A stretch of 64,000 bases of DNA from Dimorphilus gyrociliatus (Eukaryota > Animalia > Annelida). The notes under the pieces are model-generated. The model searched no databases and was not told the origin of the DNA. It worked only from the letters and a program-made list of their open reading frames with translations. The stretch lies in assembly GCA_904063045.1 (NCBI GenBank), contig CAJFCJ010000027.1, positions 496,001-560,000 on the forward strand, in the 5' to 3' direction. Shown here piece by piece: positions 51,424-60,417 of the stretch (position 1 is the first letter of the stretch; each line of letters starts with the position of its first letter). The position numbers and the translations under genes were made by a program.

Positions 51424-52598
<1,175 letters not shown>

Positions 52599-53775: not shown

Positions 53776-56729
53776 TATATCTGTCTGCACCATGTGCTTT
53801 TATGTAAATAAATATAAAAAACCAACGTAAAACAGGTTTATATGAAATTAAAAGCAGTAGAAGGAGTGAGTTGAATAATGATATCACTCTATATAGCCTT
53901 AATAAATAAGTAGAGAAACCTTCTGTAAATGAAGGGCTTAACTGAAAAATATGAAATGTTTAATTCATATAGATTTTTAATTGAAAATATTAATAGGCAA
54001 AAATAATAAAACTCCATCCAGTACTGTTTCAACAAGGTTTCCAATGCACATAATTTCAATAATATATATATATATATACTATATACAATATGTATAACTA
54101 TAAATATACGCGTTTACCGTATATAATATACTCTATATAGAGAATATTTTTATAAAATATGCCTTTATAACAGAAGCGTCTATTCAAAATAATTTATTTA
54201 ACTCCTATATAAATACTCATATATTTTTTGTGGTTATGTTTCCTTTTAAAGATTTATGATCAACAGCGTAGTTGGACTTTGACAAACAATCTTTACTTTT
54301 GGTCTTATTTTATCCATATTCTGAATATTGTCTTATCTACTTGAGCGTTTCTTTTATGTAAATATTTCATCTAAATCTTATATTACCGGCTAATATCTAA
54401 AACATCAAGTAATATTACACTCTTTGCTCTAAACAGAAGAATGAAGAGTTAAACCTTTACCATACACATTTCTCTTTTAGAAATAGAATTCTTCCAATAT
54501 TGTTGCTTTTTTAAAAATTGTCTCGTAAAATGTCTGTTTTTAATCGATCATTAAAAAGTGAAGGGAAAAAAGTTGATCGAAAGGATTAATAATAAGAAGA
54601 TTATCTCATTAAAGATTTATTTTAAAGCCGTTTTAGGATGAACAAATTAATTGTTTTTAGCTTAGCTAATAGATAACTGAAGAAACGAAAAATACTTAAC
54701 CGACTGTTGTAAAGTGTAAAGTATTCTTACATAACCATAATAGCACTATAATTAAACATATACAATATATATACATATACTGTATATATATATATATATA
54801 TACCGACACTTGTACCATTACATTAAAATATAGACGAATATGCCAGATTTAGCCAACTGCTAAAAACTTGACTTGAGCTGGAAAAGAAAAAAAAACCATT
54901 AGAAGAGAAGTTCTAAGTAGGAGAGGAGCTTTTCCCCGACGAGAGATCATCATTAATTTTTTGACGCGTACTATTTCGTGCTTAGAATCTTATTTAAATA
55001 AAAAAAAAGTAAAAAAAAAACATTTTAGACGCTTCCTCACTGATAGCCGTTTAATTTCAAGTGAAAAAAGATTGATCGGAACAATTATATGCAGTCTATA
55101 ACCTGTTGAAAAGGGACGTTAGCTTTTTTTGCAATTGATTTTTCCCTTTTTGCGAGCTTTATATATATATATATATACCTATATATTTATTTATAAATAG
55201 GGGAAAAACTACTACTATTTTATCGATTTACATCATTTTATACACTGACTTTTTATTTTAATTTGTTTAAGGTGTTTTTAATACAATTTGTCGACCGAAA
55301 ATATCTGTTTAAACAATCTGTTTTTCACATTGCCTGAGATAGTTTCAGGACGATTAATTATCTGTAAACAGGGTCGCTCGATGATTAGTAGCGCCCTCTT
55401 CTTTTTTTCACCATTTATGACATTCGGATGACCTTCGAGTTGGCTGCCATATATTTAAGATATCGCTCTTTAACCTATCATATACGCTACTAGACGATTT
55501 CGAGGGCTTGAAATCGATATCATTTCTTCAGAGATATTTGTGTTCCGGTTTGTGAAGATTCATAGAACGTATTTATTGATGTTTGTATAGAGAAAAAGAC
55601 TAGTTTATTTTAAAGCTACAAAAGAAAGAGAATCTATAGATTCACTCTTTATTGATGTAGTTTCTGTGACGGAAACTGTTATTTATAGTCTGTAATGTTA
55701 AATATGAACGACCTTATCAATATATAATATGTAACATAGTCAAAAGACTATTAAGAATTAACGACGATATAAAACAATAGTCATTAAATGTAAAGTTGAC
55801 CTTAAAAGGTAATATGCACTTGTAGAATATCTTCTCATTAACCAGCGTACAGATACTACTATAATCACGTTTTATGTCGTCATTAAAAATGGAGAGCAAG
55901 AAGGAGAGAGAGTGAGAGAGAGTGAGAGTGAGTGAAAGAATGAAAAAGATGGAAAAAGCTATATTTTTCCATCTTCAACAGAAACGCTCAATGAATAGCT
56001 AATTTTTACATGATTGCATGACTATCTCTAATCAAATATTTTATCACAATAGATTATACTACTGAGTACTTTTCTAATTACATCAAGCAAGCCAACCTAA
56101 AGGTATTAACTGACCTTACACTTGGATGAGTTTGTTCATTAATTAAACTAGCTATCTGTTATCTTAAAACATATATACATATATACATATATATAAATTT
56201 TATATATATTTATATATTATTTGTTTCATGCAGTTCAAATGCTACGGTTGCCATTCTTTCTCATAACAAGGTGAGAGAGTTCATAATTGAATAGTTTTAA
56301 CTATTGCTATTGTTTCTCTCGTTTGCTCTTCCTTTCTTTTCCCTCTCACCTCTATCTCTGTTTCCTATATCTAACTTCCTCTCTATTCAGCCGATAACAG
56401 TTACTTTTTATTTTATACCTCTAATTTTCTTTCGATTAATCAATAGCCAATAACAGTACATATGTTTATTTTAGGTCTTAAAATACATCCTAACTGATAC
56501 ATTGCCTATAATCAAATGCTATTAACGACCTTATAATAAAAGTTCTAGATGAAACTAGAACATATATTTTATATGTTTGATATTACAAAGTCGTTTCTTT
56601 CATTGTCAATTGTACTCTATACAGTATGTATATTATTGATATAATTACTATATCCTAAGAGATATTTTCATAATCAGTTTATATACTCAAATCTGAAACT
56701 ATTAATCGTCTTAGGAAGACAAACAGTAT

Positions 56730-57520
56730 ATGATATTCTATCGTATTTTGTATTTTCTAACAGCTTATCCATTGGTCTTGTCGCATACTTTTACGATCCA
56801 TCGTCATTCTCAAAGCTATTTAATTAGTAAGTTTTGTCAAATTCCTTTTGCTAGCAGAGGAAATATTAATTAAACAACTTAACTATTTTCTATTAGTTTT
56901 AACGTCTCGAATGATTATGAAACTTGTAAGTAAAACAGAATAAGAAAGAGAAAAAGGTTAGTATTAATGACTTACGCCATTATTAGGCAATGGAACGGAT
57001 ACAACTATTGAAATTAGAGACGTTAGTTATGAGAATTTAAAAGAATTATTAAAGATCAAAGACGAAACAGTACCTTATTTAATAGATGTACGAAATAGAA
57101 GTGAAATAGTTGAAACTTATCTTCTACCGAAAGCCGTTAATGTCCCATGTTAGCTTTTTATTCTTTCATTATAGATAAAATTAAATATAACTAAATATTA
57201 ATTATTCAAGTGCACGAATTAAATGAAGCCTTTCGACTTCCTAAGGACAAGTTCCAAGAGAAATATGGTAAATACAAAGCGGAAAAATCGCATTCGAACC
57301 TGATAATCTACTGTAGAAGTGGTGCAAGGGCCGTTGAAGGTTATCGATGTTTATATTCTATGGGATATATTAACATTAAGCGGTAAAAATAAAATTCTTG
57401 TAACTGCTAAAAAAAGAAATCTTTTATTGTCGCTCAAATTAGAATTAATATCCTGTTTTATTTCTTCATTACAGATACAAAGGATCCTATTTAGAATGGA
57501 ATGAACGCTTAGAGCAATAA
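56730..57520 (+). CDS. Single-domain rhodanese/thiosulfate sulfurtransferase (TSTD1/TSTD3/RDL-like) with N-terminal signal-peptide-like exon, 158 aa
   Basis: join(56730..56826,56987..57148,57211..57382,57475..57520) = 477 nt, frame-consistent (phases 1,1,2). Motifs are VSYENLKELL, LIDVRNRSE, AVNVPL, IIYCRSGARA (active-site Cys loop), MGY and YKGSYLEW. The gene is missed by the ORF track because its exons are short. The domain exons are high confidence; the exon 1 assignment is somewhat lower. Confidence 0.9.
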
Positions 57521-60417
57521 CATTATTCACTTTTGACAAATTTAATATTCATTTATGATAATAAAGTTTACACTTCTCATCTTTATTTTGTCATTTTATA
57601 AACTAGCTAACGACCATAAACAGTATCAACTTTAGTAGTTGTAAATTGTGTGTTTACAAGTAAATAATACGCTTATAAACACGTATTTTATATCCATTTT
57701 TCTTAAATTATTCACTATTAACAATTATTAAAGGAAAATTAATCCATTTCATCTCCATCCACTTGTCTCTCTCTCTCTGTCCTGGTGTCTCTTTATCTTC
57801 TTTTCCTGCTGCTCACTCACTTCAATATTTTTTGTAGTTATGTAAGCTTATTCTCTAAAACTTACATGATTCTAATATGACCTTATCGTTTACAAATATA
57901 GCAAAAAAGTCTGACACATCTTATGGTTCTATTGTATAATTAAAAAGAAGTTTTTAATAGAAGAAAAAAAACGTATCTATTTGGAAACTATAAAAAATTC
58001 TAGGTAAATGCTTTTATAGAGACAAAATGTGATATTTTTATTCTTTCCTAGGATAATTTACTAAACTATTCATAGATCCTTTTATAGCAATTGTATATAT
58101 TTTTAGAGGATTGTCTTTATTGTAAGACTGTATAGTTTTCTCTTCATTCCTTACATAAATTCTTTTCATCTGCAAGAATTCTTTAAACATACCTTAGCAA
58201 CAAAGAAAATCAACGCTGTAATATCTATAAATAGATTATAATAAGTATAGAATTCCTATAAGCTCATCCTTCATCTTTTCTCACTTATAAGTACAGGTGG
58301 TTATTAATAAAATGCGACCTTGTATATGGAATCAAGTTCACACGGAATACCTCTGCTATAAAAAGTGATTGATAGTCAATAAACTGGTTTATGCTGCCGT
58401 CGTTTATAAAGTAAATCATTAAATATAAAGCAATAAAGTACCAAATGTATATGGTATATTGCAGTACGTACTATACATTATTATAGATATATATATATAT
58501 ATATATATAGTATATTAATGTATTCAGCAATGAACATAAAGGATTACGTTAGATGGTATCATTCACATAGAAGAAAGAGTATATCTTGTTAGTGTATATC
58601 TACGCTAATTCCTAATAATTACGTGACAAAACAAACTACTTAAGTAGAAAGAAAGGGAAAAGTCAGTTAGGTGTAAACGACTCTTTCGTAGAAGAAAGTG
58701 CCGGTTGACAATAAACAAACGTAATTTCTCTTATAATAACTTGTGTATATAGCTTTCAATCTTTCTTTTAAGCCATTTTTTTATATCATTCTTACTTTGT
58801 TCTTTCTTTTCCTGCCCGGCCTATTTTTATAAAGTATAGCCTTAAGAAACTATTATGAATTATACATTCTATGCCTTTGATTTATTACGCTTGCTATTCG
58901 TATACTAGTATTATTTTTTATATACGGATTAATTATATTAATAATCTTAGCTTAATCTATTCAAATAGAATGTAAGAGAAATTATTATGAAATAGAAAAA
59001 GAGAAGAGAGCAAAGGGCTCAGATTTAATTTTACAAAGAGTTAAATAATAGCATGTACGTCAACTGTATAACAAGATTAATTAATTGACTTCCAGGAAAC
59101 GTTTCTAATTTATAATATATGTTTTTGAAAAACACATTGTATCCTCTTTCTTTCACATCTTCACAATTGTTTCTTTTTCTCCGTACTCCAGTCACTCTTC
59201 CATACCTGCTTACTTTCTCCAACTCTTATTTCTCTCTCTCTCTCTCTATCCTTCCCCTCCCCTATATTTTTTCGGTTGAGAAGACTTGAAAGAAGTATTT
59301 GAGTAGTTGGAAAACTGTTAATAAAACACGATCTTTCCAAGAAATTACTTCATCTATAACCTTATCTTATTTTATTTTTCTAGCAATTTTCACACGCCAT
59401 TCATTAATTGCTTACTCGACAGTTGGATTAATTAAAACTAATCATTTTTATACTATAGAATTTATATCATAACAATCTTAAATCAATCTTTTCATTCTTT
59501 AATTTCCCATTCTTTTTAATAAACGCAAGAAAAGCAAAGAGCTATAACTAATGGAGGATTTCAGTTTTTTAGTTCAATAATTATTCGATAGGGGACTCTA
59601 CCAAATGAATCTGTTGATAAAGCGACATCTACCGCCAAAGGTATTGTCAAGGTTCCTACGTTAGTTTATTGTTATCGTATAACAAATAGACTTTACCCAT
59701 TAGTTTAGCGTAAATAAGGCGGGAAAATTGTATTCAACTGAATGAACTGGTGAAGAGATTATATCTAAATACTATAAATGAGGTAGTTGTTGGTAAATGA
59801 TAAAAAAAAGGATTAAAGTGAGATTTATTCATACCTTAATAATAAAGATTATAATCAATTAAACCATTGAACAAAGCATAGCCAAGTTTTTAACTAGAAA
59901 ATATGGTTGTCTTTTTTTTAAAAAAAAAAGAAAATGATTATTTTTTTATGAATTCTCTCCTGTGTTTAAGCAACAACGAACGAATATTTGAACAAGCTAA
60001 AAACGCAATAATAACACACTTTTTTTTTACCTGTTGCTTCTTCCATTAGGGAAACAAAACAAAAATTGATAAAGTCTTACTATTTGTTATGTAATTATTT
60101 CAAGTATCCTTTATAAAGTATATAGAAAATTCAATACTCTCATTGCTTTTTTATTTTTAGAGGTAAAGTTGATTAAAAGGAGAGAAAGAGAAGAACAAGA
60201 AGAGCACAAGGTTGTATATATAGACTACAGGTATTTATAAATATATGCCTTTCCTTCTTTTTTAATTGTTCGTCATTGAAATGATATAAGAGTTGGGCGT
60301 GAATAGGCTTCAACGACTATTACAAATAACATTCATTTCAATACCGTAGAAATTCCAGTAATAATATCCTAGATAGTAAGTGAATTTAACTATTGAATAA
60401 CTCTGTATGTAAATCTG

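What the first reader, a model, noticed from the sequence alone, without database searches (positions are those of the whole stretch)
56730..57520. Rhodanese with a secretory signal peptide and N-glycosylation sequons: a candidate extracellular sulfurtransferase
Seen: the rhodanese frame is closed by a TGA just upstream of the 56986 acceptor, so an upstream exon is required. The nearest compatible phase-1 exon (56730-56826, A|GTAAGT) encodes MIFYRILYFLTAYPLVLS-HTF, a basic-hydrophobic-small-residue pattern. The product has sequons NGT and NRS and an intact CRSGAR loop. Established: animal single-domain rhodaneses (TSTD1, TSTD3, yeast RDL1/2) are cytosolic or mitochondrial, while exported ones are mainly known from bacteria (periplasmic PspE). 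Inference: a secreted enzyme for sulfide, cyanide or persulfide handling in mucus or body fluid, plausible for a sediment-dwelling invertebrate.
Basis: partly seen in the sequence, partly recalled or inferred. Interest (0 to 1): 0.7.

Follow-up and report, generated by a model that had tools for sequence, protein, structure and literature searches.

The report
Annelid rhodanese with hydrophobic N-terminus

Summary
The rhodanese gene is real. It is already in GenBank as DgyrCDS13749 of Dimorphilus gyrociliatus. It has an intact CRSGAR catalytic loop, and its closest solved structures are human TSTD1 and yeast RDL1/RDL2.

The proposed first exon is not. A spliced transcript contig, 100% identical to the window, shows that ATG 56730 lies in an intron. 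The exon actually starts at 56764 and is read in another frame. A 29-nt micro-exon (56897-56925) was missed. Translation starts at ATG 56239, in exon 56234-56270.

The resulting 167-aa protein begins MLRLPFFLITSLSIGLVAYFYD. That is one arginine followed by 18 uncharged residues, which is signal-peptide-like but only borderline. In this 28% GC window, 3-12% of random ATG frames look similar.

The public model uses a third, non-hydrophobic start (MESKKERD, 55889), which was not seen in the RNA examined.

Many arthropod homologues (HSP67B2/CG4456/TSTD3-like) carry clear signal peptides. The nearest relative, from the annelid Ridgeia, has a mitochondrial-type presequence.

Verdict: the gene model is corrected. 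Secretion is plausible (about 0.5) and untested. Interest is modest.

The parts
56073..56103 (+). 3' part of a 5'-UTR exon, with donor AAAG|GTATTA. It holds an in-frame TAA 11 codons upstream of the start codon. The exon's true 5' end is unknown (about 56053 if collinear with the genome).
   Evidence: The loose-end consensus of X2 record 2 (30 letters) matches 56073-56101 and is joined to 56234.
56234..56270 (+). First coding exon. ATG at 56239 (context caaATGc) encodes MLRLPFFLIT plus 2/3 of Ser11.
   Evidence: X2 records 2 and 4, joint 56270|56764 GT..AG at contig depth 334. This is the first ATG of the mRNA and opens a 167-aa ORF.
56271..56763 (+). Intron of 493 nt. It is partly retained in a minor contig (56241-56623, depth 23 against 334).
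   Evidence: tables 2, 5 and 8.
56764..56826 (+). Coding exon 2, encoding LSIGLVAYFYDPSSFSKLFN and part of Tyr32. It is the second half of the hydrophobic segment plus linker.
   Evidence: Also present in the public protein P0001.
56897..56925 (+). 29-nt micro-exon encoding FNVSNDYET and the first base of Cys42. It holds the sequon NVS. Skipping it would create a TAG stop.
   Evidence: Joints 56826|56897 and 56925|56987, both GT..AG. Translation.
56987..57148 (+). Rhodanese exon (N-terminal half of the domain), with the sequons NGT and NRS.
57211..57382 (+). Rhodanese exon holding the catalytic loop Cys-Arg-Ser-Gly-Ala-Arg (57312-57329).
   Evidence: The relative in run X1 shares the splice 57148|57211, and its three listed differences are all synonymous.
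57475..57883 (+). Last exon: the C-terminal 15 codons, stop TAA at 57518-57520, and a 3' UTR running at least to 57883.
55889..55911 (+). First coding exon of the public model DgyrCDS13749 (MESKKER + GA|GTGAGA), in GA-rich low-complexity DNA and joined to 56764 in that model. It was not seen in the transcript contigs laid here.
   Evidence: It lies outside the stretch laid, but contig 4 shows only the 56270|56764 joint.

Best explanation
Window 56073-57883 (+) is the Dimorphilus gyrociliatus gene DgyrCDS13749. It encodes a single-domain rhodanese sulfurtransferase of the TSTD1/TSTD3/HSP67B2/RDL class. The mRNA seen in a public transcriptome has a 5'-UTR exon and six further exons, and it encodes 167 residues from ATG 56239.

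Shown: the splice pattern, the ORF, the rhodanese fold, and the six-residue CRSGAR loop with catalytic Cys130.

Inferred, step 1: Cys130 takes up a sulfane sulfur as a persulfide and passes it to a thiophilic acceptor such as cyanide, sulfite, glutathione or a protein thiol, as in TSTD1 and RDL1/2.

Inferred, step 2: the N-terminus (Met-Leu-Arg, then 18 uncharged residues LPFFLITSLSIGLVAYFY, then Asp-Pro-Ser-Ser) acts as an ER signal sequence. The positive N-flank and neutral-to-acidic C-flank would place the rhodanese domain in the lumen or outside the cell. It would either be cleaved (candidate sites SIG|LV or LVA|YF) or remain a weak type II anchor. A summed Hessa free energy of about +3.3 kcal/mol for a 19-mer argues against a stable membrane helix, so cleavage and secretion is the likelier of the two.

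A second, non-hydrophobic start exon in the public annotation (55889) may give a cytosolic isoform from the same gene.
For: Gene model: the 865-nt spliced contig is 100% identical to the window, has five GT..AG joints, and is linked to the UTR exon by a second contig. Its first ATG opens a 167-aa ORF with an in-frame stop upstream.

Family: Pfam Rhodanese at 54.8 bits against a cutoff of 22.2. The best PDB sequence hits are TSTD1 6bev at 6.7e-13, RDL1 3d1p and RDL2 6k6r. The AF2 model has pLDDT above 80 and up to 98 over the domain, and the best Foldseek hit is 6bev with TM 0.89 and rmsd 2.0. Cys, Gly and Arg of the loop are invariant in 19 homologues. The gene is under constraint: the three listed differences in a roughly 95%-identical relative are all synonymous.

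Signal: 15-residue Kyte-Doolittle mean 2.1, an uncharged run of 18, net charge +1 before and 0 or negative after. It falls within the range of homologues with obvious signal peptides and far above those with presequence-like or absent N-extensions.

Precedent: about a third of the sampled active domains belong to proteins with clear signal peptides. These include Penaeus, Homarus, Panulirus, krill, Tigriopus, Lepeophtheirus, Amphibalanus, Limulus, Anopheles, Megaselia, Musca and a Pieris isoform. On the tree this trait changed at least 13 times. The sequon at DVR-N-x-S/T, present here as NRS, occurs in 27/47 signal-labelled domains against 3/32 presequence-labelled domains.
Against: The hydrophobicity is borderline. 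The 12-residue mean is 2.29, at the low end of the signal-bearing homologues, and Thr, Ser, Ser and Gly interrupt the core.

In this 28% GC window, 12% of random ATG frames reach the same hydropathy and 3.3% also have an 18-residue uncharged run.

No dedicated predictor (SignalP, TargetP, DeepTMHMM) was available.

No close relative covering the N-terminus was found, so conservation is untested.

The nearest relative on the tree, annelid Ridgeia piscesae, has a classical mitochondrial-type presequence.

The sequon count is not above chance (P=0.11).

The public annotation, made with PASA and EVM (PMC7854359), has a different, non-hydrophobic start.

RNA evidence comes from one run, as contigs, so isoform ratios across stages are unknown.
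Confidence: 0.5

Rival explanations
1. The enzyme is cytosolic. Either the hydrophobic N-terminus is an unselected by-product of T-rich sequence that is too weak to engage SRP, or the functionally dominant isoform is the annotated one starting MESKKERD (55889). The enzyme would then work like TSTD1 or Drosophila CG12279 in the cytosol.
For: The public model P0001 has a charged, non-hydrophobic start. The hydropathy is borderline, and the chance rate of such stretches here is 3-12%. Most characterised animal single-domain rhodaneses are cytosolic (PMC12189691). The sequon count is at chance level.
Against: The only transcript evidence examined has the 56234-56270 exon at high contig depth and no 55911|56764 joint. 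This ORF has no other in-frame ATG before Met145, so the hydrophobic start would be translated. Eighteen uncharged residues directly after Met-Leu-Arg are hard to leave exposed on a soluble cytosolic protein.
Confidence: 0.27
2. The enzyme is mitochondrial. The N-terminal hydrophobic stretch would act as a mitochondrial membrane anchor or part of a bipartite import signal, keeping the compartment suggested by the presequence of the annelid sister protein and by yeast RDL1 and RDL2.
For: The nearest relative on the tree (Ridgeia P0065) and many family members have presequence-like N-termini. RDL2 is mitochondrial by its PDB title. Sulfide oxidation is mitochondrial in animals (own knowledge).
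Against: There is only one basic residue in the first 27, and an Asp directly follows the stretch. There is no amphipathic Arg/Ser/Ala-rich segment and no positive C-terminal flank of the kind typical of signal-anchored outer-membrane proteins (own knowledge of Tom20/Tom70-type anchors).
Confidence: 0.15
3. One reading: translation starts at ATG 56730, exon 56730-56826 is joined directly to 56987, and the signal peptide is MIFYRILYFLTAYPLVLS.
For: The donor at 56826 is real, and the phase would fit.
Against: There is no transcript coverage of 56686-56761. The acceptor is at 56763|56764. A micro-exon lies between 56826 and 56987. In the observed mRNA this frame has no ATG and is closed.
Confidence: 0.02

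Closest known systems
Human TSTD1 (thiosulfate:glutathione sulfurtransferase, PDB 6BEV)
   Same: Both are single rhodanese domains of about 115 residues with the same fold (TM 0.89, rmsd 2.0, 30% identity). Both have a catalytic Cys in a six-residue loop followed by basic residues.
   Different: TSTD1 has no N-terminal extension and is cytosolic. The worm protein has about 45 extra N-terminal residues, made of a hydrophobic segment and a low-confidence linker, and its loop is CRSGAR where TSTD1 has CQMGKR.
Yeast RDL1 (YOR285W, 3D1P) and RDL2 (6K6R)
   Same: Both are single-domain sulfurtransferases that align over the whole domain (1.9e-12 and 7.2e-9).
   Different: They are associated with mitochondria. 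RDL2 has a presequence, not a hydrophobic signal-like start.
Arthropod HSP67B2 / CG4456-like / TSTD3-like proteins with signal peptides (for example Penaeus vannamei P0073, Megaselia abdita TSTD3.2 P0084, Lepeophtheirus salmonis P0105, Limulus P0010)
   Same: They have the same domain family, an active CRSG-type loop, and an N-terminal hydrophobic leader ahead of the domain. Many also carry the N-x-S/T sequon after DVR.
   Different: Their leaders are stronger and more canonical. Many have a second, inactive rhodanese domain, or a lipocalin domain in Limulus. The worm domain does not group with them on the tree, so any signal here arose independently. None has been characterised experimentally as far as I could find.
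Ridgeia piscesae tandem rhodanese (KAK2184793.1, P0065)
   Same: It is the nearest relative by tree and identity (43%), and it is also an annelid.
   Different: It has two active domains and a long Arg/Ala/Ser-rich presequence-like N-terminus.
E. coli PspE (periplasmic single-domain rhodanese)
   Different: It is an analogue only. No PspE chain was among the PDB sequence hits at E<=0.001, and the closest relatives of the worm protein are eukaryotic.

Membership tests
Rhodanese-like domain (Pfam PF00581) | Profile match above the curated cutoff | tested here: met
   P0001 scores 54.8 bits against a cutoff of 22.2, covering 99 of 102 profile positions. Exon 5 alone scores 22.3 bits.
Rhodanese-like domain (Pfam PF00581) | Alpha/beta rhodanese fold | tested here: met
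   The AF2 model has mean pLDDT 84.6, with the domain between 81 and 98. Foldseek's top hits are all rhodaneses, with 6bev at TM 0.89.
Catalytically active sulfurtransferase-type rhodanese | Catalytic Cys at the start of a six-residue active-site loop with basic residues, as opposed to the seven-residue Cdc25 loop or a Cys-less domain | tested here: met
   CRSGAR at 57312-57329. Cys, Gly and Arg are invariant in the 19-sequence alignment.
Catalytically active sulfurtransferase-type rhodanese | Thiosulfate:cyanide or thiosulfate:thiol sulfur transfer activity | not testable with these tools
   This needs an enzyme assay.
Eukaryotic single-domain TSTD1/TSTD3/HSP67B2/RDL group | One domain only, with closest sequence and structure relatives in this group | tested here: met
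   The names given by sources to the top hits are HSP67B2, CG4456-like, TSTD3 and thiosulfate:glutathione sulfurtransferase.
Eukaryotic single-domain TSTD1/TSTD3/HSP67B2/RDL group | Orthology to one named member (TSTD1 or TSTD3) | tested here: inconclusive
   The tree has 117 columns. The worm row is on a long branch (0.94), sister to Ridgeia with SH-aLRT 88, and no starred clade holds it.
Secretory-pathway protein with N-terminal signal sequence | An n-region with positive charge, a hydrophobic h-region, and a polar c-region with small residues at -1 and -3 | tested here: inconclusive
   Met-Leu-Arg, then 18 uncharged residues with a 15-residue Kyte-Doolittle mean of 2.1. Candidate cleavage sites are SIG|L and LVA|Y. 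The call is borderline, and such stretches occur by chance in 3-12% of random frames here.
Secretory-pathway protein with N-terminal signal sequence | A positive call by a trained predictor (SignalP, TargetP or DeepTMHMM) | not testable with these tools
The joined 167-aa protein also has no reference, so it was not sent to any search tool.
Secretory-pathway protein with N-terminal signal sequence | The leader is conserved in orthologues | tested here: not met
   The nearest relative has a presequence-like start. No close relative covering the N-terminus was found. Signal-bearing homologues exist, but in other clades.
Secretory-pathway protein with N-terminal signal sequence | N-glycosylation or disulfides typical of exported proteins | tested here: inconclusive
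   Three sequons are observed against 1.25 expected, P=0.11. There are three Cys in total (42, 130, 142), an odd number that includes the catalytic one.
Bacterial periplasmic PspE | Specific sequence kinship to PspE | tested here: not met
   There was no PspE chain among the PDB hits at E<=0.001. It is an analogy only.

The most novel reading that the evidence does not exclude
A single TSTD-type rhodanese gene of a miniature annelid uses alternative first exons. Exon 56234-56270 gives the hydrophobic start, and exon 55889-55911 gives the charged start. This would send the same catalytic domain either into the secretory pathway or into the cytosol. It would be one instance of a widespread but undescribed habit of animal HSP67B2/TSTD3-like rhodaneses: they swap N-terminal targeting exons, with a large clade of signal-peptide-bearing forms in crustaceans and scattered cases in insects and Limulus. 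That would imply an unstudied extracellular persulfide, thiosulfate or cyanide chemistry in invertebrate body fluids or mucus.
Probability: 0.3. Interest if true: 0.6.

Novelty: new member of a known kind. Interest (0 to 1): 0.35.

Why it matters
For the genome, the result corrects the 5' end of a deposited gene model: a new start codon, a 5'-UTR exon, and confirmation of the 29-nt micro-exon. It also shows how easily T-rich intron sequence in a 28% GC genome mimics a signal peptide.

For biology, animal single-domain rhodaneses are treated in the literature as cytosolic or mitochondrial. The homologue survey here shows that many invertebrate members are predicted to be exported, and no paper in the library describes this. 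If the worm enzyme or its arthropod counterparts are really secreted, sulfane-sulfur handling outside cells becomes a testable topic. That could include sulfide or cyanide detoxification in mucus, hemolymph or gut.

In itself the locus is an ordinary enzyme gene.

Tried and rejected

2. My own first alternative was a tiny exon MIMKLV (56911-56929) in phase 1. It is rejected. The real micro-exon ends at 56925, and the MIMKL frame is out of frame with the rhodanese, giving only a 22-codon internal ORF.

3. A word search with the public protein found only itself and one 41%-identical protein, so there are no close relatives for a conservation test.

4. A scan of metagenome contigs with exon 5 gave 503 pattern matches, none of them a relative.

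5. Literature searches for secreted or extracellular animal rhodaneses found nothing relevant. The rhodanese mentions in the planthopper saliva and tick sialome papers concern a USP8-type protein and a housekeeping transcript.

6. Placing the worm domain inside the signal-bearing crustacean clade is not supported by the tree.

7. Sequon enrichment as evidence for export is not significant.

8. The joined 167-aa spliced protein has no reference, so it was not sent to any search, fold or look-up tool. It was assembled only inside local scripts from window coordinates, for translation and hydropathy. Searches used exon 5 by reference and the public protein P0001, which shares residues 12-167.

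Full report
**What is in the sequence**

The window is AT-rich (28% GC). Three exons encode a rhodanese domain: 56987-57148, 57211-57382 and 57475-57520. The loop Cys-Arg-Ser-Gly-Ala-Arg lies at 57312-57329.

**RNA evidence**

One public run (X2, coded organism A, kept as contigs) holds the stretch at 100% identity. It contains an 865-nt spliced contig with these exons:
- 56241(+)-56270
- 56764-56826
- 56897-56925
- 56987-57148
- 57211-57382
- 57475-57883

All five joints are GT..AG. A second contig links 56234-56270 to an upstream UTR exon that ends at 56103. A minor contig (depth 23 against 334) runs unspliced from 56241 to 56623. Contig depth is zero over 56686-56761.

A marine metatranscriptome (X1) holds a roughly 95%-identical relative with the same 57148|57211 splice. 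Its three listed differences (57242, 57332, 57359) are all synonymous third positions by my reading of the codons.

His ATG at 56730 is intronic, the exon begins at 56764, and a 29-nt micro-exon was missed.

Joining the observed exons in a local script gives a first ATG at 56239 (context caaATGc). It has an in-frame TAA 11 codons upstream in the UTR exon, and it opens a 167-codon ORF. The small ORF MIMKL in the micro-exon, which I first considered, is out of frame with the rhodanese.

**Identity**

A HMMER search of 1.84 billion representatives with exon 5 alone returned a 164-aa protein that is 100% identical over the exon. It is DgyrCDS13749 / CAD5125542.1 of Dimorphilus gyrociliatus, the miniature annelid with a 73.8-Mb genome and a median intron of 66 bp (PMC7854359).

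The public model equals the transcript ORF from Leu12 onward, including the micro-exon. It starts differently, with MESKKER+D from 55889-55911, a GA-rich stretch. I saw no 55911|56764 joint in X2. However, the laid stretch began at 56230, and the annotation pipeline gave heavy weight to transcript assemblies, so an alternative first exon cannot be excluded.

**Family**

- Pfam Rhodanese: 54.8 bits against a cutoff of 22.2.
- Best solved relatives by sequence: human TSTD1 (6bev, 6.7e-13), yeast RDL1 (3d1p) and RDL2 (6k6r).
- AF2 model from a 19-sequence alignment: mean pLDDT 84.6, domain blocks 81-98, first 44 residues of low confidence.
- Foldseek puts 6bev first, with TM 0.89, rmsd 2.0 and 30% identity.
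- In the alignment, the DVR motif, the catalytic Cys, and the Gly and Arg of the loop are invariant.

The enzyme should therefore work as these relatives do, through a Cys persulfide. That step rests on family knowledge and was not tested.

**The N-terminus**

The transcript-encoded start is MLRLPFFLITSLSIGLVAYFYDPSSFSKLFNYFNVSNDYETC, followed by the domain.
- The 15-residue Kyte-Doolittle maximum is 2.1, over residues 4-18.
- The uncharged run is 18 residues.
- The net charge is +1 before the run and 0 to negative after it.
- The simple Hessa sum for a 19-mer is about +3.3 kcal/mol (the scale values are from memory).

This looks like an ER signal sequence rather than a mitochondrial presequence. 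There is one basic residue in the first 27, and an Asp directly follows the stretch. It also looks like a cleavable leader rather than a stable anchor. The charge rule predicts that the domain would be translocated.

The case is borderline. The 12-residue mean of 2.29 is at the low end of homologues with obvious signal peptides. In this window, 12% of random ATG frames of at least 30 codons reach the same hydropathy, and 3.3% also have an 18-residue uncharged run.

The three sequons (NVS, NGT, NRS) compare with 1.25 expected, P=0.11.

**Relatives**

A profile word search gave 1313 hits at E<=1e-10. The top 120 are named HSP67B2, CG4456-like, TSTD3 or thiosulfate:glutathione sulfurtransferase where a name exists.

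I scanned the N-termini. Many have textbook signal peptides:
- Penaeus, Panulirus, Homarus and Meganyctiphanes
- Tigriopus, Lepeophtheirus, Eurytemora and Amphibalanus
- Limulus, where a lipocalin domain precedes two rhodaneses
- Anopheles culicifacies, Megaselia (TSTD3.2, 140 aa) and Musca
- an isoform of Pieris rapae whose sister isoform differs only in the first exon

Others have presequence-like starts or none.

A quick IQ-TREE of 147 active domains over 117 columns is poorly resolved. It places the worm domain on a long branch, sister to the annelid Ridgeia piscesae tandem rhodanese (SH-aLRT 88, not starred). That protein has a classical presequence-like N-terminus. The signal label needs at least 13 changes on the tree. 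My labels are a hydropathy heuristic, not a trained predictor.

The sequon after DVR, present in the worm as NRS, occurs in 27/47 signal-labelled domains and 3/32 presequence-labelled domains. This is confounded by shared ancestry.

So exported forms of this family are probably common in arthropods. If the worm's leader is functional, it arose separately.

**Literature**

Searches for secreted or extracellular animal rhodaneses found nothing pertinent. A recent Drosophila paper treats CG12279, CG4456 and CG6000 as single-domain rhodaneses and predicts CG12279 to be cytosolic (PMC12189691). The library is limited to open papers.

**Verdict**

A different, RNA-backed N-terminus is signal-like, but only marginally, and there is no conservation or experimental support.

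My odds are about 0.5 for entry into the secretory pathway, 0.27 for cytosolic and 0.15 for mitochondrial.

The locus is a new member of a known kind, already deposited with a different 5' end. The more interesting lead is family-wide: many invertebrate rhodaneses are predicted to be exported, and their N-terminal exons are repeatedly swapped.

**Left out**

Searches were done with exon 5 by reference and with the public protein.

Noticed in passing
window 51879-52598 (+): A 239-aa open frame with three consecutive C2H2 zinc fingers (Pfam zf-C2H2 1.3e-19). The finger block looks EGR/Krox-like. It is the upstream neighbour of the rhodanese gene on the same strand.
   Followed up: partly
window 55889-55911 (+): The deposited model DgyrCDS13749 starts here (MESKKER, in GA-rich low-complexity DNA with several possible GT donors) and skips both the UTR exon and exon 56234-56270 that the transcript contigs show. 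It is either an alternative promoter and first exon or an annotation error.
   Followed up: partly
window 56241-56623 (+): A minor contig runs unspliced into the 493-nt first coding intron (depth 23 against 334 for the spliced form). This intron is far longer than the species' 66-bp median, and long introns are reported to be retained more often in this worm (PMC7854359).
   Followed up: no
proteins P0147 and P0137 (Pieris rapae / P. brassicae TSTD3 isoforms): The two isoforms are identical from 'STMVDPVRF' onward but have different first exons. One is signal-like (MESLRSINALFAIGIVCMANLS). The other begins MGNSNS, a possible N-myristoylation start. This looks like the same kind of first-exon switch as suspected in the worm.
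   Followed up: no
protein P0010 (Limulus polyphemus XP_013788659.1): A signal peptide and a lipocalin-like N-terminal region are followed by two active rhodanese domains in one 448-aa protein. This combination is unusual and apparently undescribed. I judged the lipocalin part by eye only.
   Followed up: no
window 56170-56225 and 58478-58512: Two (TA)n / (TATATA)-type microsatellites flank the rhodanese gene. I avoided them when laying reads.
   Followed up: no
family alignment, position after the DVR motif (window 57094-57102): An N-x-S/T sequon directly after DVR is present in 27 of 47 domains from signal-bearing proteins, in only 3 of 32 from presequence-bearing ones, and in the worm protein. 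It may mark exported members but is confounded by shared ancestry.
   Followed up: partly
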